A DNA stretch of 64,000 nt from Mobula hypostoma (taxonomy: Eukaryota). The stretch spans positions 163,556,001 through 163,620,000 of the forward strand of contig NC_086102.1 of the NCBI RefSeq assembly GCF_963921235.1, in the 5' to 3' direction. The notes under the pieces were generated by a model. That model saw only the letters and a program-made list of their open reading frames with translations, was not told the DNA's origin and made no database searches. A program made the translations under genes and the position numbers. This document shows, in pieces, positions 5,523-61,956 of the stretch (position 1 is the stretch's first letter; the number at the start of each line of letters is the position of its first letter).

Positions 5523-5569
5523 ATTGCTTGGATTTCCAGCATCTGCCGATTTTCTCTTGTTTGTGATAA
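5523..5569 (+). mobile_element. 47-bp Penelope-like terminal fragment with TSD
   Basis: TTGCTTGGATTTCCAGCATCTGCCGATTTTCTCTTGT matches the termini of the other Penelope copies here. Flanked by GTTATTACTT at 5513-5522 and 5570-5579. Confidence 0.75.
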
Positions 5570-8500: not shown

Positions 8501-9442
8501 CATCATGAACAGCACTGGCGCGCAGATATTTACTTTTGCACTATTCCATGGCCTTCGCAGTGGTAAAACGGGAGCTATGAACACACGTAGCCTTCAGAAG
8601 ATTGTACGTGTCATGGTTAATTGGATCGAACTGCAGATCTCATTCGGTACTCATTTTAAAGTAGCCAATGCTTACTCTTTTTTTCTTTTTATAAATGATG
8701 GAAAATATAGTTTGTCATAATGTAATTATACAGTGGCGCTACGTGGAGAGCTTGCAAATTGGTCTAATTTCAAGGCGGTAAATCTGATTGTCAGTTTTTA
8801 ATACGTATAAAAGTCGCCCAGAAAATCTGTAATAGAAAAAGAAGTTGACAGGATGGGCCCAAGAAGTGGGGTTATTATTGTATATTCTTCAATATCTGTA
8901 AGAATTGCTATTCAGCAATGGGGTGTTTATTGCATGAACTATATTCCAAGCATCCTTGAAGGAAGAAGACCTAAAAGTTTTCCACGTCATTAATAGTCTA
9001 ATAGGGGGTTAAAAAAGGTACGAAGGACGTCAAACAAAATTCTCATACTCCATTCTATGTAATGTGGAAGCCTTCCCGCTAGTTGACACCTTCTCCCAAC
9101 ACTAACATATAAAGAGTGTCCGAATATTCACTTGGCAATACTGTTCAACACTAGGGCCATACTGTTTTTAAATTACCTGCTCTGGACATAAAAGGTGACT
9201 CCAAAATAGAGTTCATTTTGTTAAGGGTGGTACATAAACGCAATGCTTTGAATCAGACGGTACATTGGCAGCAATATTTGACCTTTGGTATGCAATGGAA
9301 AAAGGTATTAACTGACCAGCATTTCATTCGAATGCTTTTAATTGTAATTACCTAATGAACCGAGTTTTAAACATCAGGTTATTGTATCGTTTACTATGCA
9401 CGTAAACCATTTCTCTAGATATTCACAGCAAATATTGGCATG

Positions 9443-10731
9443 TAACATACACAAAATTATGGAGGAACTCAGCAGAGACAAGAGAAAATCTGCAGTGCTG
9501 GAAATCCAAGAAACACACACAAAATGCTGGAGGTTCTCAGCTGGCCAGGCAGCATCTATGCTAAATAGTATAGACGACGTTTCGGGAAGAGACCCTTCAG
9601 CGGGACTCAAAGAGCCTTGGCCCGAAACATCGACCGTTTACTCTTTTCCATAGGTCCTGCATCGCCTTCTGAGTTCCTCCAGCATTTTGTGTGAGAAACT
9701 CAGAAGGTCGGACAGCGTCCACGAGGGGTGATTGGTAAGTTCTTGGCCTAAGGTAGAAGGAGTCAATTTTAGAAAACCTAGCACATTTATTTTTCAACAT
9801 AGTCCCCTCCTACATGTACACACCTAGTTCAGCGGTCATGGAGCATACGGATCCCTTCTTTGTAGAAGTTAGTGTCTTGGACCTCCAGTAAGTGGTCCAC
9901 AGCAGGGGTGATTGATAAGTTCGTGGCCTAAGGTAGTTGGAGATAAGTTATTAACTTCAAACTTTCCGCATAATCACTCAAAGAGTTGAACTACATGTGC
10001 ATGTAACGAGAGCTGTATAACTCAGGCCCGCAATCAATTCATCCAGGTGAGGCAACAGCGAATCTGTTGGGGTCTTCTACTGTACCCGGTGCTCCCGATA
10101 TGGCCTCCTTTACACTGATGAGATCCGAGGTAGATTGGAGGACGTCTTTACGGAACACCTTCGTTCCATCCTCAAAAAAAAACCAAGAGTTTCAGGTTTT
10201 AATTCCAATCCGCATTCTTATTTAGATATGTCGGCCCATAGGTTCCTCTATCGTCATGATGAGGCCACTCTCAGGTTGGAGTTCCGATACCTCTTGTTCC
10301 CTCTGGATAACCTGATGGTATGAATATCGATTTCTCTAACTTCTGGTCATTTTCTACCCTCTCCCTTCCTTCTTCTTCCATTCCTCACTCTGCCTCCCTC
10401 CTTACCGCTTCTCTTCCCCAGGTCTGCCTATCATCTCCTCCTTCCCTTTCTCCAATGGTCTCCTATCAGGTGCCTTCTTCTCCAGTCCTTTACCTTTTCC
10501 ACTTCACCTCCTAGCATCTTGCTTCATCCCTCCCACACCAATCTAGGTTCGTCAATCACCTTCTAGCGTGTACTCCTTCCCCTTTCCGCACCTGCTTATT
10601 CTGGCGTCTCTCCGTCCCCCCCCCCCCCCCGCCCACCCCCCACCTTCCTTTCAGTCCTGAAGAAAGGTCTCGGCCGAAACATAGTTGCTGTCTGACCTGC
10701 TGAGTTCCTCCAGCATTTAGTGTGTGTTGCT
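9443..10731 (+). mobile_element. Decayed Penelope-like element (GIY-YIG remnant, inverted pseudo-LTRs) with nested insertions
   Basis: From ~10058: ESVGVFYCTRCSRYGLLYTDEIRGRLEDVFTEHLRSI...FNSNPHS...DEATLRLE...GMNIDFSNF, a GIY-YIG remnant with the Cys/His insert. A pyrimidine-rich 3' region follows, with a degenerate hammerhead CTGAAGA..GAAAC at ~10657-10680. A nested palindromic pLTR unit lies at ~9477-9693. Confidence 0.85.
9721..10023. mobile_element. Mariner-like non-autonomous element fragment nested in the Penelope element
   Basis: ACGAGGGGTGATTGGTAAGTTCTTGGCCTAAGGTAG at 9721, repeated directly at ~9904. Resembles mariner TACGAGGG termini. Confidence 0.5.
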
Positions 10732-12947: not shown

Positions 12948-13037
12948 TCAGACTCGAGAGCAGCTTGGATGCATCGGTTGTTGCACACGAAGAAGCTTTT
13001 TTTCTTTTTGTCTCTGGTTTTGGAACCATATTTTTAC
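12948..13037 (-). CDS. hoxd14: Homeobox D14, exon 3 (helix 3 and C-terminus)
   Basis: TTTTCAG|GTA AAA ATA TGG TTC CAA AAC CAG AGA encodes VKIWFQNQRQKEKKLLRVQQPMHPSCSRV*. WFQNQR is the vertebrate Hox14 signature. Confidence 0.95.
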   Translation of the reverse strand, partial: VKIWFQNQRQKEKKLLRVQQPMHPSCSRV

Positions 13038-13186
13038 CTGAAAATAGAAGCAAAATTTAATAAAACAAAATATGGCAAATATGAACGGAAACAACAGGAA
13101 TTCTGCAGATGCTGGAAATTCAAGCAACACACATCAAAGTTGCTGGTGAACGCAGCAGGCCAGGCAGCATCTCTAGGAAGAGGTAC

Positions 13187-13222
13187 AGTCGACGTTTCAG
13201 GCCGAGACCCTTCGTCAGGACT
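13187..13222 (-). ncRNA. Minimal type I hammerhead ribozyme motif (sense to hoxd14 pre-mRNA)
   Basis: The - strand reads AGUC-CUGACGA-AGG GUCUCGG CCU-GAAA-C-GUC|GACU: both core boxes intact, stem I AGUC/GACU, stem II AGG/CCU, palindromic ACGU stem III, GUC cleavage triplet. Confidence 0.8.
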
Positions 13223-13275
13223 AACTGAAGGAAGAGTGAGTAAGGGATTTGAAAGTTGGAGGGGGAGGGGGAGTT

Positions 13276-13311
13276 AGTCCTGACGAAGGGTCTCGGCCTG
13301 AAACGTCGACT
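13276..13311 (+). ncRNA. Minimal type I hammerhead ribozyme motif (antisense to hoxd14)
   Basis: AGTC CTGACGA(13280-13286) AGGGTCTCGGCCT GAAA(13300-13303) C GTC GACT. Confidence 0.8.
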
Positions 13312-13507
13312 GCACCTCTTCCTACAGATGCTGCTTGGCCTGCTGCGTTCACCAGCAACTTTGATGTGTGTTGCAAATATGAACGGCCTCGGTTTAATGT
13401 TCTGTGAGAATAAACACGCCCACCTGTTGACAAACTAAAAGGGAACACCGTCGCCCAGGTACTCCACTTTTTTTGGTTTTGTAAAAGCAGAAAAGAGATA
13501 GTCTTAC

Positions 13508-40629: not shown

Positions 40630-42005
40630 TCAAAGTAAATTTATTACTAAAGTATATATATGTTGCCATATACTACCTTGATATTCTTTTTCCAGCAGGC
40701 ATTTACTGGAAAAACAAAGAAATATTATAGAATCTATGAAAAAATACATAATGACTGACAAACAACCAATGTGCAAAAGAAGACAAACTAAAATAAAAAA
40801 TAATGTTAAGAACATAAGTTGTAAAGAGTCCTTGAAAGTGAGTCTGTAGGCTTGAGAATTGGCTCAGAGTAGTGTTGAATAAAGTTATCCATGCCAGTTC
40901 AAGAGCTCAGTGGTTCTACGGTAACAACTATTCCTGAACCATGTGATGTGGGATTTAAGACTTCTGCACCTCCTGCCTGATGGTAGTAGTGAGAAGAGAG
41001 CATGGCTTGGATGGTAGGGGATCTTGATAGTTGCTGCTTTCTTGTGGAGGTGGTCCGTAAAAATATATTCTGTACAAACACAAGAAAATATGCAGTTTAC
41101 ATCAAAGTTGCTGGTGAACGCAGCAGGCCAAGCAGCATCTATAGGAAGAGGTGCAGTCGATGTTTCAGGCCGAGACCCTTCGTCAGGACTGTTGCTGGAT
41201 CTCCAAGTAACACACACAAAATGCTGGAGGAATGCAGCTGGCTGTTGCTCCTGGTGTGGCCTTCTGTATATCAGTAAGATCTGCTGTAGATTGGGAGACT
41301 GCCATCTGACAGAAAAAGCAAGATCTCCCAGTGGCCACCCATTTCAACTCTACTTCCCATTCCCATTCCGACATGTCAGTCCATGGCTGCCTCTACTGAT
41401 GTGATGAGGCCCCACTTGGGTTGGAGGAGCAATAGCTTATATTCTCTCTGGGTAGCCTCCAACCTGATGGCATGAACATTGATTTCTCAGACCTCTTGTT
41501 ATTCCCCCCCATTTCCGTTTTTCCCCCCTCACCTTATCTTCTTGCTCATCACCTCCTTCTCTGCTCCTCTGCCTTCCCTTTCTTCCATGATCTTCTTCCC
41601 TCTCCTATCAGATTCCCCCTTCTCCAGCCCTTAATCTCTTTCACCAATCAACTTTCCAGCTCTTTACTTCATCTCTCCCCCTCTCCTAATTTCACCTATC
41701 ATTTACCACCACTTTCCTTTCCCCACTCCTTCTTGTTCTGATTTCTCATTGTTTGCCCCCGTAGTGCTGATAAAGAGTCTTGACCTGAAATGTTGGCTGT
41801 TAAGTCTTTTCCATAGATGCTGCCCAGTCAGCTGAGTTCCTCCAGCTTTTGGTGTGTGTTGCTTAAATATATTCTGTGATGGACAGGGTGGTATCCATCA
41901 CTTTCTGTAGCCTTTTCTGTTCCTGGGCATTGGTGTTTCCATAATAGGCCATGATATAACGGGTTGGGACACACTCCACTGTGCATCTACAAAAGATTAT
42001 TGATG
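40630..42005 (-). mobile_element. Rex1/Babar 3' fragment interrupted by a Penelope element
   Basis: HPSHALFSLLPSGRRCRSLKS...FRNS in ORF 40885-41217; the element resumes after 41865. Confidence 0.7.
41074..41864 (+). mobile_element. Truncated Penelope-like element with inverted pLTR and a nested younger pLTR fragment
   Basis: 13-bp TSD AAATATATTCTGT at 41061-41073 and 41865-41877. GIY-YIG remnant CSWCGLLYISK...HFNSTSHSHSDMSVHG...LGSLQPDGMNIDFS. Hammerhead motif on the - strand at 41155-41191. Confidence 0.88.
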
Positions 42006-43319: not shown

Positions 43320-44848
43320 CAATGTTTTCTCTAATTTTTAGTAGTCGGTGTGCGCAAAAATCTTATGTTGTGCAAATTTTTTTCCTGTGACAGAAGTATG
43401 TGCACACTGAATGCGCACATAGCACAGTTTATGTAGGTTTACAAAATATTCAACATAAAACTGCACAGAATAACAACAAAATAACATACATATTTAAGTC
43501 ACTCAGTTATTTTTTTCTCTCTGCTGTTTTTGGCATTTACCTATTCTTTGTAAACTCTATCTAGACTAATAGAACTTCCATTCAGTTGATAGCTTTTGAT
43601 TCTCATTAACATATCCAAATGACATTCGCCTAAACAGTTTCTCAGGTTGTTTTTGAGTTGATTCATTAGGCTAAAACCTCGCTCACAGTCCGCATTAGAC
43701 GCAAGAAAAGTTCCCCCAATGTCCATCAATTGTGCAAGGTCGCAAAACCGTTCATTTTGAAGTTCAAATGCCACCATTTGAGCAAAGTTTGAAATCAGTT
43801 TAGATTTAATTTTTTTCTTCCATGGAAAATCTGAAATCATTAAACTGTCTATTACAGTATTTTCAGCTAGAAGATCATGAAATTTTAGACATAAGGCATT
43901 AACTTGTTCATCGCCAAATGTGAAGTCACAATCTGTAATTGCGGAGAAATCAAAAGCTGACCATTCTTGTGCCTCATCTTTAGGAAACCTTTTTTTCTAA
44001 ATGAACACAAAGACTATATAAAAGTCAACAGCGAACTTGCAATTTACTTGCCAAATGACGCTTCAAAAAGTCAAGTTTCCAAATATCATCCCACTTTCCA
44101 CTAGCAAATTCTCCAGCAACTTTCGCATAACAATACGAACAGATAACTCCAGTTTCCGAATCATACATAAATATTTCTCATAGCTGAATGTTCGTGGCCT
44201 CATGAGTTTTCAGTGTAGCAGTTTCCACTATTTTGTTAAGCCATTCAACTTTAAACAAATTTGCAGTTCTTTTGCGCTTCACACCATTTGCTTCTTTTGA
44301 ATTCGAGATAGTAAATCAATATTTTTTTCAATAAAAACTTAGTAAGCTATCTACAGGATTTGAAACAGATCTTTGTAAACTTTACAATATGAACACTGTC
44401 CGCCAAACATGGCTGCCGCCGTGATGCAGCTGTGCAAACCGGAACAGGTGAGGTGACGTAAATTAATGACGTGTATTGTGGTATTTGAAAACCAACTAAC
44501 TAGTTAACAGCAACACACATAGAAGTTGCTGGTAAACGCAGCAGGCCAGGCAGCATTTCTAGGAAGAGGTACAGTCGATGTTTCGGGCCAAGCTCCTTCG
44601 TCAGGACTGCCTGGCCTGCTGCGTTCACCAGCAACTTTTATGTGTATTGCTTGAAATTCCAGCATCTGCAGATTTCCTCGTGTTAACTAGTTAACAGAAA
44701 CAGTTAGCTAAAAGATTATTTTCAATAAGTATAATTATTAATTACTGTATTATTTTAGTAACCTTTTGTGTGCACATTAATTTCCTTTGCGTGCTGGTTG
44801 AAAAATGTGTGCGCGCGCGCACACGTGCACAGCTTAGAGAAAACATAG
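43320..44848 (-). mobile_element. Internally deleted hAT transposon with transposase remnant
   Basis: TIRs CAATGTTTTCTCTAA and TTAGAGAAAACATAG; perfect TSD TCTGTGGG at 43312-43319 and 44849-44856. ORF 43541-43840 has the hAT dimerisation motif SNADCERGFSLMN...LRNCL. Confidence 0.92.
44511..44683. mobile_element. Palindromic Penelope-derived insertion inside the hAT element
   Basis: 14-bp TSD TAACTAGTTAACAG at 44497-44510 and 44684-44697. Inverted arms; hammerhead motif on the - strand at ~44573-44608 with GUC changed to AUC. Confidence 0.9.
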
Positions 44849-48579: not shown

Positions 48580-51500
48580 GTCAGTCCTGGCTATGACTCT
48601 AAACTGCAACTGGTGATGAGGCTCTGATTGGGGAGTTTCAGAGCTTTGGGGAAAGTGGAGTTACCCCTTAGTCATTCATTGCTCCCAGGGCCACTCTGAC
48701 CCGGAACGGTAGCACCTGCAAGGGTTCCTGCTCAGGATACGAGCGAAGGCCAATGGCAGATCCAGCAGGTTCAGTAACTGAACTTATAATGGAGAAGGCG
48801 GATGAGCTATGACCTCAAATATCAAGGGCTATACTATAGGCGGATGAACATTTGGGAAGAGAAATGGTGATTTCTTTAGTTCGCCCAATGGTAGGCAATA
48901 GCAAACCACCGTTGCAATTTGCTAAGAAAACCATGGTCAAACTCACAAAATATATCACACAACAACAGCGTCAAGAGGATCTTCAAGACAACTCTGAAGA
49001 TGTTTCGCTTGGTAGGGTTGATTCTGGCCAGCAGGGGATGGCTGACTGTCATCAAGCTACTCATGAAATTAAAGTAACACAAAAGAAGATTATTGCCACT
49101 TGGAATGTAAGAACCCTATATTAAGCAGGAAGATTGGACAATGTGATAAATGAAATGGAAAGACTAAAGATTAACATCATGGGAATTAACAAAGTTCCTT
49201 GGGTAGGTGCTGGAACATGTCAGATTAGAAGTAAAACACTGGTTTATTCTTGTGGAACTTCCCATACTAATGGAGTAGGAATTCTTATGGATGAAAACAT
49301 GCAAAAAGTCTTTTAGGACATTGGGCAATATCAGAAAGAATACTCCTTGTTTGATTCAGAGGACAACCATTTGATTTAGCAATTATATAGGTATATGCGC
49401 CAACAACAGATAGAACAAATGAAGATATAGATAAATTCTATGAAGAGCTTGAACAAGCAAAGAATGGATGCAAATCTCAAGATATCGTTATTGTCATGGG
49501 AGATCTAAACATGAAAGTAGGACAAGGTGCTGATGGAAATACCACAGGAAAATTTGGACTAGGGGAAAGAAATGAAAGAGGTGAGAAATGGGCAGAATGG
49601 TGCAAGATGAATAATCAGGTCATCATGAATACCTGCTTTAAAAACCATCCAAGATGCTTGTGGACCTGGAAAAGTCCAGGTGATAACACTAGAAATCAAA
49701 TAGACTTTATTACTATAAACCAAAGATTTAGAAACTCAGTGACTTAATGCAAAACATATCCAGGTGCTGACTGTAATAGTGACCATAACCCAGCAGTATG
49801 TCATATAAAAGTAAAACTTAAAAAACTAAAGAAGCAAATACCTGAACAATCCCTTGACTACTTCAATTAATTAAAGAAGAAAACTTAAGACAAAAATTGA
49901 CAATTGAGGTGAGGAAAAGATTTCAAAGTCTAGAAATAGAATCTGTTGAAGATGATAGCAATCATTTAGAAATGAAATTTAACTTTCTAAAGGATGCCTT
50001 GGTAGAATCAGCAAAGTCAGTGATTCCTAAAAAAGAAAAAAGCACAAAGAATAAATGGATGACAGATGAAATTAAAAAAAATCTAATGGAAGAAAGGAGA
50101 CGGAAGAAAGCAAATCTTATAGAATACAAGTCCTTAGATTAAAAAAAGTTAAAAGCCCATGTCAAAAAGCCAAAGAAGAATGGTTAAACCAGGAATGTGA
50201 GCAAATAGAAAGAATCCCTATTACTGATCCAAAAAGGTTACATCAACAAATCAAGAATATCACTGGTAAAAAGCTCCTCTGTTCTTCAGGTGGATGTTTG
50301 AAAGCAAAGGACGGTACCATTATCATGGAAAAAGATGAGATTATGAACAGATGGACTGAGTATATTCAGGAATTATTTGAAGACGATCGAGGTGAAAAAC
50401 CAGAAATTAAGATAAACATTGAAGGTCCAAGTATTTTAAAATATGAAGTTCGTAATGCAATAAATAAGATGAAGAAAGGAAAGGTAGCAGGTCCTGAGAT
50501 GAATTAGTAATAGAACAAATTGTTGCCCTTGAAGATTATGGAATTGAAAAACTTACTGATTTAATCAGTGACATTTATGAGACTGGAATAATACCAGAAG
50601 AGATGAAAAAATCAGTATTTATCACTCTTCCTAAGAAAGCTGGAGCAATAGAATGTGAATTACATAGGACCATAAGTTTAATGAGTCATATCACCAAGAT
50701 ACTTGTAAGAATTTTGATGACGAGCTAAAAGTAAGATAGAAGCTGAAATAGACGAAGAACAATGTGGTTTTGTGAAAGACAATGGTACAAGGAACGCAAT
50801 ATTGATGTTAAAGGCTGATTTATACTTGTGCGTATCAGCTTACGCCGTAGCCTACACAAGTGGGCTACGCTGTTGTGAGCATTTATACTTGTACGTTGCT
50901 GTGCCTGCGTCTCTCTGCAATTCGCACACGTCACGCATGTGCACACACCTGCCCGTGCAAGGCTTCATGGTCATGGTAGTCTTTCTCGGGGTAAACAAGT
51001 TTAAAGTGAGCGTCTTTTTTCATAGAAGCGAAATGTGTTCTCCATCATTTCGGAGGTCTGTAAAGCTTTATGGAAAGCATTGCAGCCAGAGTCCCTTCCC
51101 TGCCCTTCAGTCGCCCAATGGGAAGCTATTGCAGCGTAGGAGGAAATGCGATGCTACCAAGCTGACCAATCACAGTTTTTGTAGTCTGCATTGCTGTGAT
51201 GCGCAGTTACATTTTGGGAGAGGTGCGTGTCAGGCATAAGGATCAGCGTAGGCACTGCGTAGGGTTCGTGGCTGCGCCGTACCTACACATCATCAATTTA
51301 ACGCACAAGTATAAATCAGTCTTAAGGATGCTATCAGAATGAGCTATTCAAGTGCAAAAAAATTTGTTTGTTTTTTCGACTACACAAAAGCATTTGATGA
51401 AGTGAAGCACTAAGTTATTTGAAATATTATGGAAAGTTCTAGATCTAGATTCGAAAGACTTCCGCCTAATCAGAAATCTGAACTGGGAACAAACTGCCGC

Positions 51501-52447
51501 CGTAAGAAGAGATGGAGAAGTGAGTCAGTTTACGAAAATCAAGAGAAGTGTTAGACAAGGGTGTGTTTTCTCCCCTGATTTATTTAATGTGAACAGTGAA
51601 ACAATATTACAAAAAATAAGAGACATCTTGGGAATCAAAGTTGGCGGTGAAAACATCAATAATTTCAGATATGCAGATGACACTGTTAATTGCAAGGAAG
51701 AACTACAAAACTTAATTGATATAATTGATGTAATTGTTGAAGAAAGTGCAAAAATGGGTCTATCTATCAATTGCAAAAAGACAGAATGTATGGTGATATC
51801 CAAAAAGAAGGAGAATCCCATCTGTAGGCTGAGAATAAATGGGGAAGACATAAAACAAGTACAGAACTTTTGCTGCTTAGGAAGCTGGGTGACGTCAGAT
51901 GGCAGGTGCGACTTGAACATCAAAAGAAGAATAGGGATGGCAAAAGACACCTTTGCGAGAATGAAGAGTATACTGACCAATGCTAAACTAGGTATGACAA
52001 CCGGCCTCAGAGTACTGAAATGTTATGTTTATCCAGTTATGTTATATGGCTCAGAATGTTGGACAATATCTAGTAACATGAGGAAACAAATTGTAGCAGC
52101 AGAAATGTGGTTTTTGAGGAGAATGCAAAGAATATCATGGACGAAACAAATATCTAATGAGGATGTCATGAACAGAGCAAGCACAAATACAGAAATGTAT
52201 GAGATCATGAAAAGGCAATGTAACTTCATTGGACATGTGATTAGGAAAGAGGAGTTAGAATGCACGGTAATTATGGGAAAGATTGAAGGGAAGAATGCAA
52301 GAGGAAGACGAAGACAAATGATGATGGAGACAGCAGCCAGAGAATTGGAAATGAATACCAATAAATTGATCCACTTGACCCGAAACAGGAGTGTGTGGGC
52401 CATGGCAGTCAAAGCTCAAACTGGGCATGGCACCTGATGATGATGAA
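48580..52447 (+). mobile_element. Apparently full-length but disabled RTE-clade LINE
   Basis: APE motifs IATWNVRTL, MGDLN and NQIDFI; RT motifs RQGCVFSPDLFN and FRYADD; LYGSECW; (TGA)n tail. TSD AGGCATTT at 48572-48579 and 52448-52455. Several stops and frameshifts. Confidence 0.93.
50812..51322. mobile_element. PIF/Harbinger-type MITE inside the RTE ORF
   Basis: 22-bp TIRs AGGCTGATTTATACTTGTGCGT and ACGCACAAGTATAAATCAGTCT; TAA TSD at 50809-50811 and 51323-51325. Removing it restores ILMLRMLSE in the RTE frame. Confidence 0.88.
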
Positions 52448-53733: not shown

Positions 53734-55271
53734 GTACCGTCCTTCATTTTTTTCATTTTTCATTCAAATGTATAAATGGTGTAAATGTGAAAAAGTTGTG
53801 ATGTAGTGGCTGCTAAGTGACAAACAATCCAGATCCTGAAATTCAAATTGCAACCAACAATTTGCAGTCTGTCACTAATTTGGTATTTAAACAAAATTAA
53901 GTAATGAAGTCTGCAAAAATAGTAGATTGTCAACAACAACAAAACAAAATTTGGTGCACTGATTTCTTCTGGGGAGGTGATTTGCTATCTTTGTGCAGTC
54001 TAGCCTTAATGTGACTGCTGATCCACCTATATGGTTGGCTTTGAAATGGCTTCGAGCAGACTACTTGAATAGAGAAGCAAGTCATTAGACGGTGAAATAT
54101 AACAAAGTTCACAAATAAGATGTCACTTGTAGTTTGGGATTAGGCTAACTCAGTTCAATGGGCCCTCTTCAACCAGCCACCAAAATATACCAGAGAATAT
54201 TGCTTGACATTTCCAGTTTTTTTGAGTTTGGAGATGATGTTTGATTTCAGCAGATAACACTGTTTTACTTAAACTATTCTTTTGTAAGTGATTGGGAGAG
54301 AAGCTTGTAACTATTGGGTTTTCACCAAAGTAAGTACTGTTTCTGTGCAGAAGGCAAGACAAATAAGATTTTGTGTATATGCAAATAAGAGTAAGCTTTC
54401 AAGTTTTATTACTGTACAGTGTCCTATTGTTTGGACCTGTCTTATCAATTAATGAGACATCAGTGCTCTTGAACACAATTTAAACAAAAACATAGAGTAG
54501 TCAGACTGCAAACAGAATGCTGAAAATAAGCTTGAAGCTTTGTCATTTGGCTTGCCGGAATTTGCATTTGCTTTGTTAGTGCCAATGAAGTGAGGTTGCA
54601 ACGACAGCTGATGTTTATTATGATAGCAGAGAATGCAATTTAACAGGTATAAAAATAGCTTCAGCCTCATCTATTTATAATCTGAGGTGGAGCATACGCA
54701 GATTCTGGGAGGAAACCCTAAGTGATTATGAAGAACTCTGAATGTAGCTACACCTGAAATGCAGTTGCTCAGGGAGGATAAAAGGAAAGCCCATGTGTCA
54801 GAATTGTTAGGATTTTTAAAAAGGTATATAGCAGTAACCAGTTGATCTAAATGTCTTGTTTATGTGTTTATCTGAATTTGTGATTAGTACTAAGTGGGGG
54901 TGACAGAAAATAGTATTGTGTTTGGTTTGGTGATTATAGGATATTTGGTAACGTCTGGTGACTCAAGCTGGTTTTTGTTTGCTGGTGAGAAGTAAGAACG
55001 GGCAAATTGAAAGCAAGGATAGAAACTTTACAGTGAAAACCTTGGTGAAAGGGGAACAGTTGGCATCCATCTGTCTAGAAGGACAATGGGTGATGATCAT
55101 TATCACAAGTCTTGGAAGATATGAAGATTCTGAGATGCCCAGTCGCCAAGATGCCCTCTCGGCCTCACCAGTGTGGTCCAAAGGAAAGCTTATGAAGCAA
55201 TATGTTTGGCACCAGCTTGGCTGCAGGAGCTGCTGGAAGGATGTTCAATGACGTGCAGTTGCCTTAGGGGG

Positions 55272-56690
55272 CAAGGAAGCAAAAAGGAAATTATAGACCT
55301 GTTAGCTTGACATCAGTGGTTGGGAAGTTGTTGGAGTTGATTGTCAAGGATGAGGTTAGAGAGTACCTGGAGGCATATGACAAGATGGGCAGAACTCAGC
55401 ATGGATTCCGTAAAGGAAAATCCTGCCTGACAAACCCATTACAATTTTTTGAGGAAATTACAAGTAGGCTAGACAAGGGAGATGCAGTGAATGTTGTATA
55501 TTTGGATTTTCAGAAGGCCTTTGACAAGGTGCCACACATGAGGCTACTTAACAAGATAAGAGCGCATGGAATTATGGGAAAATTACATACGTGGATAGAG
55601 CGTTGGCTGATTGGCAGGAAACAGAGTGGGAATAAAGGGATCCTATTCTGGTTGGCTGCCGGTTACCAGTGGTGTTCCACAGGGGTCCATTTTGGGGCCG
55701 CTTCTTTTTACATTGTACATCAATGATTTGGATTATGGAATAGATGGCTTTGTGGCTAAGTTTGCTGACGATACGAAGATAGGTGGAGGGGCTAGTAGTG
55801 CTGAGGAAACGGAGAGTCTGCAGAGAGACTTGGGTAGATTGGAAGAATGGGCAAAGAAATGGCAAATGAAATAACAATGTTGGAAAGTGTATAGTTATGC
55901 ACTTTGGCAGAAGAAATAAACGGGCAGACTATTATTTAAATAGGGAAAGAATTCCAAATTCAGAGATGCAACGGGTCTTGGGAGTCTTTGTACAGGATAC
56001 CCTTAAGGTTAACCTCCAGGTTGAGTCGGTGGTGAAGAAGGCGAATGCAATGTTGGCATTCATTTCTAGAGGAATAGAGTATAGGAGCAGGGATGTGATG
56101 TTGAGGCTCTGTAAGGCGCTGGTGAGATCTCACTTGGAGTACCGTGGGCAGTTTTGGTCTCCTTATTTAAGAAAGGATGTGCTGACGTTGGAGAGGGTAC
56201 AGAGAAGATTCACTAGAATGATTCCAGGAATGAGAGGGTTAACATGTGAGGAACGTTTGTCCGCTCTTGGACTGTATTCCTTGGAGTTTAGAAGAATGAG
56301 GGGAGACCTCATAGAAACATTTCGAATGTTGAAAGGCATGGACAGAGTGGATGTGGCAAAGTTGTTTCCCATGATGGGGGAGTCTAGTACGAGAGGGCAT
56401 GACTTAAGGATTGTAGGGCACCCATTCAGAACAGAAATGCGAAGAAATTTTTTTAGTCAGAGGGTGGTGAATCTATGGAATTTGTTGCCACGGGCAGCAG
56501 TGGAGGCCAAGTAATTGGGTGTATTTAAGGCAGAGATTGATAGGTATCTGAGTAGCCAGGGCATGAAAGGTTATGGTGAGAAGGTGGGGGAGTGGGACTA
56601 AATGGGAGAATGGATCAGCTCATGATAAAATGGCGGAGCAGACTCGATGGGCCAAATGGCCGACCTGCTCCTTTGCCTTATGGTCTTATG
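55272..56690 (+). mobile_element. 5'-truncated CR1 LINE
   Basis: ORFs 55307, 55611 and 55897: LDFQKAFDKVPH, SGVPQGSILGPLLF, KFADDTK, YSLEFRRMRGDLIE; TTATGG-repeat tail. Confidence 0.93.
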
Positions 56691-60031: not shown

Positions 60032-61956
60032 TGGTCACCGAATTATAGGAACAAACATAGTACATAGAATAGTACAGCACAGTACAGGCCCTTCAGCCCA
60101 CAATGTTGTGCCAACCCGCAAACCCTGCCTCCCATATAAGCCCCCACCTTAAATTCCTCCATATACCTGTCTAGTAGTCTCTTAAACTTCACTAGTGTAT
60201 CTGCCTCCACCACTGACTCAGGCAGTGCATTCCACGCACCAACCACTCTCTGAGTTAAATAAAAAACCTCCTCTAATATCCCCCTTGAACTTCCCACCCC
60301 TTAGCTTAAAGCCATGTCCTCTTGTATTGAGCAGTGGTGCCCTGGGGAAGAGGCGCTGGCTAGCCACTCTTATCTATTCCTCTTATTATCTTGTACACCT
60401 CTATCATGTCTCCTCTCATCCTCCTTCTCTCCAAAGAGTAAAACCCTAGCTCCCTTAATCTCTGATCATAATGCATACTCTCTAAACAGGCAGCATCCTG
60501 GTAAATCTCCTCTGTACCCTTTCCAATGCTTCCACATCCTTTGTATGGTGAGGCGACCAGAACTGGACACAGTACTCCAGGTGTGGCCTAACCAGAGTTT
60601 TATAGAGCTGATCATTACATCGTGACTCTTAAACTCTATCCCTCGATTTATGAAAGCTAACACCCCATAAGCTTTCTTAACTACCCTATCCACCTGTGAG
60701 GCAACTTCCAGGGATCTGTGGACATGTACCCCCAGATCCCTCTGTTCCTCCACACTACCAAGTATCCTGCCATTTACTTTGTACTCTGCCTTGGAGTTTG
60801 TCCTTCCAAAGTGTACCACCTCACACTTCTCTGGGTTGAACTCCATCTGCCATTTCTCAGCCCATTTCTGCATCCTATCAATGTCTCTCTGCAATCTTTG
60901 ACAATCCTCTACACTATCTACAACACCACCAACTTTTGTGTCGTCTGCAAACTTGCCAACCCACCCTTCTACCCCCATATCCAGGTCGTTAATAAAAATC
61001 ACGAGAAGTAGAGGTCCCAGAACAGATCCTTGTGGGACACCACTAGTCACAATCCTCTAATCTGAATGTACTCCCTCCACCATGACCCTCTGCTTTCTGC
61101 AGGCAAGCCAATTCTGAATCCACCTGGCCAAACTTCCCTGGATCCCATGCCTTCTGACTTTCTGAATAAGCCTACCGTGTGGAACCTTGTCAAATGCCTT
61201 ATTAAAATCCATATAGATCACATCCACTGCACTACCCTCATCTATATGCCTGGTCACCTCAAAGAATTCTATCAGGCTTGTTAGACATGATCTGCCCTTC
61301 ACAAAGCCATACTGACTGTCCCTGATCAGACCATGGTTCTCTAAATGCCCAGAGATCCTATCTCTAAGAATCTTTTCCAACAACTTTCCCACCACAGACG
61401 TAAGGCTCACTGGTCTATAATTACCCGGACTATCCCTACTACCTGTCAACAAAATAGAGAGAGTACAGAGGAGATATACTAGAATGTTGCCTGGGTTTCA
61501 TCTCCTAAGTTACAGAGAAAGGTTGAACAAGTTGGGTTTTTATTCTTTGGAGTGTGGAAGGTTGAGGGGGGACTTGATAGAGGCATTTAAAATTATGAGG
61601 GGGATAGATAGAGTTGACGTGGATAGGCTTTTTCCATTGAGAGTGGGGGAGATTCAAACAAGAGGACATGAGTTGAGAGTTAAAGGGCAAAGGTTTAAGG
61701 GTAGTATGAGGGGAACTTCTTTACTCAGAGAGTGGTAGCTGTGTTGAACGAGCTTTCAGCAGAAGTGGTTGAGGCAGGTTTGATGTTGTCATTTAAAGTT
61801 AAATTGGATAGATATGTGGGCAGGAAAGGAATGGAGGGTTATGGGCTGAGTGCAGGTCGGTGGGACTAGCTGAGAGCAGAGTTTGGCACGGACCAGAAGG
61901 GCCGAGATGGCCTTTTTCTGTGCTGTAATTGTTATATGGTTATATTTTTGTTATAT
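60032..61956 (+). mobile_element. CR1 3' fragment split by a second CR1
   Basis: TGGTCACCGAATTATAGGA (60032-60050) continues as TGTCAACAAAATAGAGAGAG (61445); ORF 61484-61738; TSD GAGTC at 60027-60031 and 61957-61961. Confidence 0.8.
60051..61444 (-). mobile_element. 5'-truncated CR1 LINE (innermost of the nest)
   Basis: ORFs 61057-61452, 60466-61050 (SGVPQGSVLGP, KFADDTK) and 60043-60297; ACATAG-repeat tail at ~60051-60070. Confidence 0.93.

What the first reader, a model, noticed from the sequence alone, without database searches (positions are those of the whole stretch)
13075..13386. Double hammerhead-ribozyme palindrome inserted in the homeobox-splitting intron of hoxd14
Seen: a 284-bp insertion with a 14-bp direct repeat fills most of the 470-bp intron 2 (about 172 bp without it) and ends 51 nt from the 3' splice site. 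It has two 103-bp inverted arms (3 mismatches) around a 45-nt purine spacer. Each arm carries a complete minimal type I hammerhead (AGUC-CUGACGA-AGG/CCU-GAAA-C-GUC|GACU), so one ribozyme is transcribed whichever strand is read. Known: Penelope-like elements carry minimal hammerheads with a palindromic stem III that work mainly as dimers. Inference: in hoxd14 pre-mRNA the antisense arm is made first and should sequester the sense ribozyme in a ~100-bp hairpin. This would be a self-silenced ribozyme and a dsRNA/ADAR substrate that could affect splicing or stability of a Hox transcript. The predicted cut lies between 13191 and 13190.
Basis: partly seen in the sequence, partly recalled or inferred. 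Interest (0 to 1): 0.85.

Follow-up and report, generated by a model that had tools for sequence, protein, structure and literature searches.

The report
Penelope-type double hammerhead insertion, Hoxd14 intron
The palindrome in the Hoxd14 intron is real, but it is an ordinary lineage-specific insertion of a short Penelope-like retroelement that typically lands as a head-to-head pair, and its two minimal hammerhead motifs are passenger parts locked in a long hairpin.

Summary

Sawfish and numbfish orthologues have a 170- and a 165-nt intron with one copy of the target site. The insert is therefore a clean, lineage-specific 298-bp gain.

It is not special to this gene. The same roughly 130-nt unit occurs at seven or more other places in the 64-kb window. 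One is a single copy with its own 10-bp duplication, and two are further head-to-head pairs.

The anatomy matches the published signature of Penelope-like element (PLE) insertions: an inverted 5'-truncated partner, a 35-nt "tail" at one end only, variable duplications and a hammerhead with an ACGU helix III. No PLE coding sequence lies in the window, so this is a non-autonomous or truncated derivative.

In either transcript the ribozyme strand pairs with its complement (-216 kcal/mol, z = -29), so cleavage is not expected. Effects on editing or splicing are untested.

The scan has noted this family many times elsewhere in this genome, including another intronic double-hammerhead palindrome. 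Interest is low to moderate.

The parts
13075..13088 (.). Left copy of the 14-bp target-site duplication (GCAAATATGAACGG)
   Evidence: Perfect direct repeat. Present once in the Pristis and Narcine introns.
13089..13123 (-). 35-nt 'tail': a 3' extension present on the left copy only
   Evidence: Conserved in family copies C, F, G and J but missing from the right arm. Matches the one-sided 30-40-bp PLE tail (PMC8557442, PMC11167929).
13124..13226 (-). Left arm = copy A of the repeat unit; the hammerhead is sense on the minus (Hoxd14) strand
13186..13223 (-). Minimal type I hammerhead motif, minus strand; predicted cut between 13191 and 13190
   Evidence: Descriptor hit with helix I 5 bp and helix II 4 bp with a bulged A; sequence.
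13227..13271 (.). 45-nt spacer, purine-rich on +, pyrimidine-rich on -. Origin unresolved. It is the hairpin loop, and on the minus strand it reads like a 3' splice site.
   Evidence: composition; no other match in the window; unpaired loop.
13272..13374 (+). Right arm = copy B; hammerhead sense on the plus strand; ends at the short 3' end of the unit
13275..13312 (+). Minimal type I hammerhead motif, plus strand; predicted cut between 13307 and 13308
13373..13386 (.). Right copy of the target-site duplication; its first two bases (GC) overlap the arm as microhomology
13038..13507 (-). Hoxd14 intron 2 (470 nt), which splits the homeobox and hosts the insertion
   Evidence: orthologues.
12948..14888 (-). 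Intact three-exon Hox14 gene: exon 1 14888-14360, exon 2 13689-13508, exon 3 13037-12948; 266 codons
   Evidence: tblastn with the Hemitrygon protein; arithmetic. Hox13 lies downstream and Evx upstream on the other strand.
15938..16100 (-). Single copy C of the same unit (96% identical, intact hammerhead) with its own 10-bp duplication, about 1.1 kb upstream of the Hoxd14 ATG
44497..44702 (.). Second head-to-head pair of the family (copies E and F), with a 14-bp duplication, no spacer, and one long-end and one short-end arm

Best explanation
This is a lineage-specific retrotransposon insertion. Two copies of a roughly 130-nt non-autonomous Penelope-like unit are joined head to head and flanked by one 14-bp target-site duplication. 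Each unit consists of a minimal hammerhead, about 90 nt, and optionally a 35-nt tail.

The most likely origin is a single event. This is inferred by analogy with the anole Poseidon enzyme, which nicks and extends both target strands and starts reverse transcription at two adjacent internal sites. One target strand primed at the distal start site, giving the left arm with its tail. The other primed at the proximal site, giving the right arm without a tail. [quoted passage not shown]

The hammerheads are cis-parts of the element's RNA, not host functions. They lack a helix III loop, so at best they would cleave as dimers, and in the one PLE assayed cleavage needed the PLE protein. Whichever strand is transcribed, the ribozyme strand is paired with its complement in a 103-bp hairpin. 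The insert is most likely a neutral passenger in Hoxd14 intron 2.
For: Geometry and duplication. Empty site in two orthologues. The Hemitrygon gene span is 294 bp shorter.

The unit is a dispersed family with at least 9 copies in 64 kb. A single copy has its own 10-bp duplication, and a second pair has a 14-bp duplication. Three of three head-to-head pairs combine one long-end and one short-end arm.

The hammerhead core is intact only in the youngest copies A, B and C and is broken in D, E, G, H and I, so it decays after insertion. The hairpin folds at -216 kcal/mol, z = -29. The gene is intact.

Literature: min-HHRs sit in PLE repeats, and pairs on opposite strands 100-700 bp apart have been reported (PMC4209133). 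An inverted 5'-truncated copy plus a one-sided 30-40-bp tail is typical of PLEs (PMC8557442). PAc extends both strands, the tail is the stretch between two RT start sites, the HHR is inactive without protein, and cleavage is not needed for insertion (PMC11167929). The PAc hammerhead shares GAAACGUC and the extra base after A9.
Against: No reverse transcriptase/GIY-YIG reading frame lies next to any copy in the window, so the PLE assignment rests on structural hallmarks and published descriptions. The 45-nt spacer has no match elsewhere and is unexplained. The 10.1-11.1 pair is G-U (or A-U) rather than the usual G-C. No Rfam model matches. There are no expression, editing or cleavage data. The single-event origin is inferred, not shown.
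Confidence: 0.85

Rival explanations
1. Same element, but built in two steps. A single copy (left arm with tail) inserted first with the 14-bp duplication. A second copy later inserted in inverse orientation exactly at its 5' end.
For: At two of the three sites where the arms differ, the right arm shares the state of copy D, while the left arm matches C and E at all three. PLEs are reported to insert into or next to existing copies (PMC6765202).
Against: No separate duplication flanks the right arm. The only duplication encloses the whole composite. The same architecture recurs at 44.5 kb and 9.5 kb, which is what a one-step mechanism predicts.
Confidence: 0.08
2. The insert has been co-opted. 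The intronic 103-bp dsRNA is edited by ADAR or diced, or the exposed pyrimidine tract plus AG in the loop acts as an alternative acceptor, and this tunes Hoxd14 output in this lineage.
For: A very stable hairpin forms in the pre-mRNA. The loop reads as a branch point, pyrimidine tract and CAG on the gene strand. The insert lies 37-51 nt from the true acceptor.
Against: It is absent from orthologues. Identical structures occur in non-genic places. There is no conservation to assess. Use of the cryptic acceptor would remove the recognition helix, yet the gene is intact and conserved.
Confidence: 0.05
3. It is a MITE or foldback DNA transposon with 103-bp terminal inverted repeats, or an assembly artefact that created a false palindrome.
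For: Long terminal inverted repeats with a flanking duplication look superficially like a MITE. PLE structures are known to trouble assemblies (PMC8557442).
Against: Arms occur singly with their own duplication. Duplications vary (10 and 14 bp). The ends are asymmetric (35-nt tail on one side). Inner junctions vary from a 45-nt spacer to none with truncation. The three arm mismatches and an exact duplication matching the orthologous empty site argue against an artefact.
Confidence: 0.02

Closest known systems
Penelope-like element insertions of the Penelope/Poseidon type (for example Poseidon_Ac 'PAc' of Anolis; PMC11167929, PMC8557442)
   Same: An inverted 5'-truncated partner copy, a 30-40-bp tail at one end only, variable target-site duplications, AT-rich targets, and a hammerhead a short way upstream of the 3' ends of insertions. 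The GAAACGUC helix III/cleavage segment and the extra base after A9 are the same as in PAc.
   Different: There is no RT/GIY-YIG reading frame. The whole unit is only about 130 nt, so it is a mini or non-autonomous derivative. N7 is C (ACG) where autonomous elements may place their AUG. The host is a batoid fish.
Minimal PLE hammerheads (min-HHR; Cervera and de la Pena 2014, PMC4209133)
   Same: Type I topology, a bare conserved core, a palindromic 15.1-16.1 segment (ACGU) that allows helix III only in a dimer, a short helix I, an unpaired base before helix II, and dispersed heterogeneous families. Pairs on opposite strands 100-700 bp apart were already reported.
   Different: Helix II here is short (3-4 bp against 7-8 bp in the schistosome families), and 10.1-11.1 is G-U or A-U rather than G-C.
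Metazoan non-LTR retrozymes (PMC7229834; bioRxiv 10.64898/2026.07.22.740005)
   Same: Short non-coding units with a type I hammerhead, thought to derive from PLE terminal repeats and to be mobilised by PLEs.
   Different: Retrozymes are head-to-tail tandem arrays that give circular RNAs. This locus is an inverted pair, so one transcript carries one sense and one antisense ribozyme and cannot form the tandem dimer.
Inverted-repeat Alu pairs in primate introns (general knowledge)
   Same: Two retroelement copies in opposite orientation within an intron that fold into long dsRNA, the classic ADAR substrate.
   Different: Those arise from two independent insertions. Here the pair most likely arrives as one unit, with a ribozyme motif in each arm.

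Membership tests
Hammerhead ribozyme, type I | Conserved core C3-U4-G5-A6-N7-G8-A9, G12-A13-A14, A15.1/U16.1, H17 | tested here: met
   CUGACGA ... GAAA-CG-UC in both arms. 0 of 200 simulated windows give a hit with helices.
Hammerhead ribozyme, type I | Helices I and II formed, with helix I open | tested here: met
   Helix I is 4 bp plus a G-U. Helix II is 4 bp with a bulged A, or 3 bp without.
Hammerhead ribozyme, type I | Closed helix III that lets a single molecule fold | tested here: not met
   A15.1-C-G-U16.1 with no loop. The free arm's lowest-energy fold (-12 to -15 kcal/mol, z about 0) is not the hammerhead fold.
Hammerhead ribozyme, type I | Match to Rfam hammerhead covariance models | tested here: not met
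   No hammerhead family at the gathering score or at E<=10.
Hammerhead ribozyme, type I | Self-cleavage | not testable with these tools
   Needs in vitro transcription of monomer and dimer, with and without PLE protein.
PLE minimal hammerhead (min-HHR) | Palindromic 15.2-16.2, allowing a dimeric helix III | tested here: met
   ACGU in A, B and C. It is lost (ACAU) in the older copies D and E.
PLE minimal hammerhead (min-HHR) | Unpaired base between A9 and 10.1, and a G10.1-C11.1 pair | tested here: inconclusive
   The bulged-A register gives G-U in A, B and C and G-C in copies E and G. The alternative register gives A-U.
PLE minimal hammerhead (min-HHR) | Member of a dispersed multi-copy family | tested here: met
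   At least 9 copies in the window.
Penelope-like element insertion | Adjacent inverted 5'-truncated copy | tested here: met
   This locus plus the 44.5-kb and 9.5-kb loci.
Penelope-like element insertion | 30-40-bp tail at only one end | tested here: met
   35 nt at 13089-13123, on the left arm only. The same asymmetry holds in the other two pairs.
Penelope-like element insertion | Target-site duplication of variable length | tested here: met
   14, 10 and 14 bp.
Penelope-like element insertion | RT plus GIY-YIG reading frame | tested here: not met
   No such frame next to any copy. The only RVT_1 hits are LINE-like fragments at 51-52 kb and 60-61 kb. The unit is therefore filed as a non-autonomous or truncated derivative.
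Non-LTR retrozyme | Head-to-tail tandem units, each with a hammerhead | tested here: not met
   The arms are inverted. Only a partial tandem junction is seen, at 41.1-41.24 kb.
MITE / foldback DNA transposon | Both terminal repeats always together, with a fixed duplication length | tested here: not met
   A single arm has its own 10-bp duplication at 16 kb. The ends are asymmetric.
microRNA precursors mir-4650 / MIR1144 | Rfam gathering score | tested here: not met
   45 bits against a gathering score of 80.7, and 42.7 against 90. These matches are driven by the long hairpin alone.

The most novel reading that the evidence does not exclude
In this stingray-like lineage the PLE pair has changed Hoxd14 RNA processing. 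A 103-bp intronic dsRNA sits 37-51 nt from the acceptor. It is edited or diced, and it displays a strong cryptic acceptor in its loop. This lowers or diversifies output of a gene whose homeobox is split by this very intron.

A second, more modest novelty concerns the mechanism. The two arms carry different subfamily variants. If general, this would be genomic evidence that each target strand is primed on a separate template RNA by a dimeric PLE particle.
Probability: 0.07. Interest if true: 0.55.

Novelty: new member of a known kind. Interest (0 to 1): 0.25.

Why it matters
Mostly as a clean, datable example. It has an exact empty site in two other batoids, a perfect duplication, and all three PLE hallmarks in 298 bp. 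It supports the view that the minimal mobile unit of a PLE is the hammerhead plus the RT-initiation region. This is the same region that in vitro work found necessary in the template RNA.

It also shows that a Hox gene tolerates a very stable dsRNA-forming insert next to the acceptor of its homeobox-splitting intron. It does not open a new question about ribozymes or Hox regulation unless RNA data show an effect.

Tried and rejected
Rfam at the gathering score and at E<=10 gave no hammerhead, only sub-threshold microRNA and lncRNA matches caused by the hairpin.

Pfam on the ten longest reading frames found no GIY-YIG or PLE frame.

A search for the spacer elsewhere in the window gave only chance 8-12-mers. 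A resemblance to the C-rich stretch upstream of the copy at 10.6 kb is compositional only.

Cofolding two sense arms gave -31.5 kcal/mol, but the predicted structure is a general duplex through the GGCC and GUCGAC palindromes, not the hammerhead dimer. Thermodynamics therefore gives no support for the dimer.

Folding the single unit gave z about -0.7, so there is no thermodynamic signal for the 3' stem-loop.

The family was not found in the 7.7-kb Hoxd14 loci of Pristis and Narcine.

DNA of the closest orthologue (Hemitrygon akajei) could not be fetched, so only its gene span could be used.

Lunse et al. 2017 is not in the held library.

The MITE, chance and artefact readings were rejected for the reasons given under rival explanations.

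Full report
OBSERVATION

- The repeat finder reports one inverted repeat, 13124-13226 against 13272-13374: 103 nt, 97% complementary, 45 nt apart. It also reports a perfect 14-bp direct repeat at 13075-13088 and 13373-13386.
- The three arm mismatches lie at 13163/13335, 13173/13325 and 13185/13313. The spacer is 84% purine on the + strand.
- Each arm reads, on its sense strand: helix I strand AGUC (plus a U that can wobble-pair), CUGACGA, a helix II hairpin, GAAA, CG, UC, then GACU(G).
- The scissile bonds would be C13307|G13308 on the + strand and 13191|13190 on the - strand.
- A descriptor written after the published min-HHR definition hits only three places in the 64-kb window: the two arms and 16075-16048. 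It hits none in 200 first-order Markov simulations once helices are required.
- Rfam gives no hammerhead match at the gathering score or at E<=10. This is expected, because the motif has no helix III loop.

HOST GENE

On the minus strand lies an intact three-exon Hox14 gene of 266 codons: exon 1 14888-14360, exon 2 13689-13508, exon 3 13037-12948. It is colinear with the annotated protein of the red stingray Hemitrygon akajei, at 91, 95 and 87% identity per exon.

A Hox13 gene lies downstream at 2.3-3.6 kb, and an Evx gene lies on the opposite strand at 19-21.7 kb. The horn-shark protein that UniRef names HoxD14 is among the hits. The window therefore comes from a batoid close to stingrays.

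Intron 2 splits the homeobox between ...TERQ and VKIWFQN. It spans 13038-13507, 470 nt, GT..AG. The insert proper ends 51 nt from the acceptor.

THE INSERT IS A LINEAGE-SPECIFIC GAIN

The orthologous introns of Pristis pectinata (L001) and Narcine bancroftii (L002) are 170 and 165 nt. In the alignment the flanks are well conserved, the target site is present once, and the window has a clean 298-bp extra block.

The Hemitrygon gene span is 1647 bp against 1941 bp here, a difference of 294 bp. This suggests the insert is absent there too, but its DNA could not be fetched.

THE INSERT BELONGS TO A REPEAT FAMILY

BLAST of the element against the window finds copies at:

- 15941-16078 (96% identical, minus strand);
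- 41099-41190;
- 44509-44608 together with 44607-44684;
- 9475-9607;
- 41762-41868;
- 10644-10731;
- 5524-5562.

Aligned in ribozyme-sense orientation, the unit starts just before the hammerhead core. It ends either about 95 nt later at ...GUGUGUUGC (the "short end") or 35 nt further on at ...CAGAAUUCCUCGUGUU (the "long end").

The copy at 16 kb is a single unit with its own 10-bp duplication. So the arms move singly, and duplication length varies.

The 44.5-kb locus is a second head-to-head pair with a 14-bp duplication and no spacer. The 9.5-kb locus is an older, third pair. In all three pairs, one arm has the long end and the other has the short end. In the Hoxd14 insert the long-end extension is 13089-13123, on the left arm only.

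The hammerhead core is intact only in the three youngest copies (both arms here and the 16-kb copy), which also keep all five CpGs. It is broken in the others: ACAU in D and E, and core substitutions or deletions in G, H and I. The motif therefore decays after insertion and is not maintained by the host.

COMPARISON WITH WHAT IS KNOWN

- Cervera and de la Pena (PMC4209133) defined these minimal hammerheads in the terminal repeats of Penelope-like elements. Their features are a bare core, a palindromic 15.2-16.2, an extra base before helix II, low activity even as dimers, and thousands of mostly solitary copies. They already noted pairs on opposite strands 100-700 bp apart.
- Craig et al. (PMC8557442) describe the typical PLE insertion as strongly 5'-truncated. 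It often has an inverted 5'-truncated copy directly adjacent, and a 30-40-bp tail that is often present at one end only.
- The in vitro study of the anole Poseidon element (PMC11167929) makes five relevant points. The enzyme cleaves and extends both target strands. Reverse transcription starts at two adjacent internal sites, and the interval between them is the tail. The hammerhead lies at the start of the reading frame. It shows no cleavage without the protein. Ribozyme mutants insert normally.
- That element's hammerhead shares the GAAACGUC segment and the extra base after A9 with the one here.

The Hoxd14 insert thus shows all the structural hallmarks of a PLE insertion.

What it lacks is any RT/GIY-YIG frame. 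None is found next to any copy in the window. I therefore file it as a non-autonomous or severely truncated PLE derivative. Its roughly 130 nt cover the part of the template RNA that the in vitro work found to be required: the hammerhead region through to the RT start sites. That last point is an inference by analogy.

MECHANISM

- Shown: the geometry, the duplication, the empty site, family membership, and the tail asymmetry.
- Inferred: one retrotransposition event in which the two target strands were each extended from template RNA. One started at the distal site and the other at the proximal site. The two cDNAs were then joined at their template-5' ends.
- Unexplained: the 45-nt spacer, which has no other match in the window.

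One detail bears on the mechanism. At two of the three positions where the arms differ, the right arm shares the state of the 41.1-kb copy, while at all three positions the left arm matches the 16-kb and 44.5-kb copies. None of the three differences is a CpG change, although all CpGs are intact. This suggests the arms were copied from two different template RNAs rather than diverging in place. Alternatively, the pair was built in two steps, which I give 0.08 because only one duplication encloses the composite.

CONSEQUENCES FOR THE HOST RNA

The gene is on the minus strand, so the complement of the right arm is transcribed first, then the pyrimidine-rich spacer, then the sense hammerhead. The hammerhead begins only a few nucleotides after the spacer, at the loop-proximal end of the arm.

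The insert RNA folds into the full hairpin at -215.6 kcal/mol, against -78 +/- 5 for shuffles (z = -29). The free arm folds at only -12 to -15 kcal/mol, into a non-hammerhead structure. A plus-strand transcript is in the mirror-image situation (-208 kcal/mol).

The motif also needs a second sense copy and probably PLE protein. Cleavage of Hoxd14 pre-mRNA is therefore not expected. A long intronic dsRNA is a plausible ADAR or Dicer substrate, but that holds for any inverted retroelement pair, and there are no data here.

VERDICT

The identification as a Penelope-type double hammerhead is supported. The functional speculation is untested and unlikely to be specific.

The scan's own notes show that this family was flagged many times elsewhere in the same genome: 310 notes hold the words hammerhead, Penelope and ribozyme. 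They include another intronic double-hammerhead palindrome and a note on head-to-head pairs with long duplications. Those notes are unchecked, but they agree with what I tested in this window.

It is a new member of a known kind. Interest is 0.25.

Noticed in passing
window 13227-13271, minus strand: On the Hoxd14 sense strand the hairpin loop reads as a C-rich tract, then CTTAC/CTCAC branch-point-like motifs, then TCTTCCTTCAG, directly before the hammerhead. This is a textbook cryptic 3' splice site held single-stranded in the loop. Its use would read into a stop after about 34 codons and remove the recognition helix. In D. virilis Penelope an intron ends at the 5' end of hammerhead helix I (PMC4209133), so the spacer might be PLE-derived.
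   Followed up: partly
window 13124-13226 against 13272-13374, compared with 41099-41190 and 15941-16078: At two of the three positions where the arms differ, the right arm shares the state of the 41.1-kb copy, while the left arm matches the 16-kb and 44.5-kb copies at all three. All CpGs are intact. This suggests two template RNAs of different subfamilies in one insertion.
   Followed up: partly
window 15938-16100: A single-unit copy with an intact hammerhead on the minus strand, a 10-bp duplication (TATAACGAGA), and 12 unrelated bases (16079-16090) at its 5' junction. It lies about 1.1 kb upstream of the Hoxd14 start codon, in the Evx-Hox14 intergenic region. If it lay within a long Hoxd14 transcript, it would be a second sense ribozyme in cis.
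   Followed up: partly
window 44497-44702 and 9439-9707: Two more head-to-head pairs of the family. The first has a 14-bp duplication, no spacer, and one arm truncated at unit position 74. The second is older and degraded. In both, one arm has the long 3' end and the other the short one.
   Followed up: yes
window 41099-41242, minus strand: A partial head-to-tail junction: the 3' part of a diverged unit is joined directly to the start of the next unit at ...CAG|TCCTGACGA. This is the partial-tandem arrangement typical of PLEs and retrozymes.
   Followed up: no
window 13387-13507 and 13038-13074, against L001 and L002: Outside the insert, intron 2 is strongly conserved between this batoid, sawfish and numbfish, with long identical runs. 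The insert landed inside this conserved stretch.
   Followed up: no
window 50076-52434, 55268-56511, 60469-61497: Fragments of LINE-type reverse transcriptase frames (Pfam RVT_1). They are not PLE-like and not linked to the hammerhead family.
   Followed up: partly
window 13150-13350: Sub-threshold Rfam matches to the microRNA precursor models mir-4650 and MIR1144 (E 7e-9 and 5e-6, far below their gathering scores). They are produced by the long hairpin alone.
   Followed up: yes
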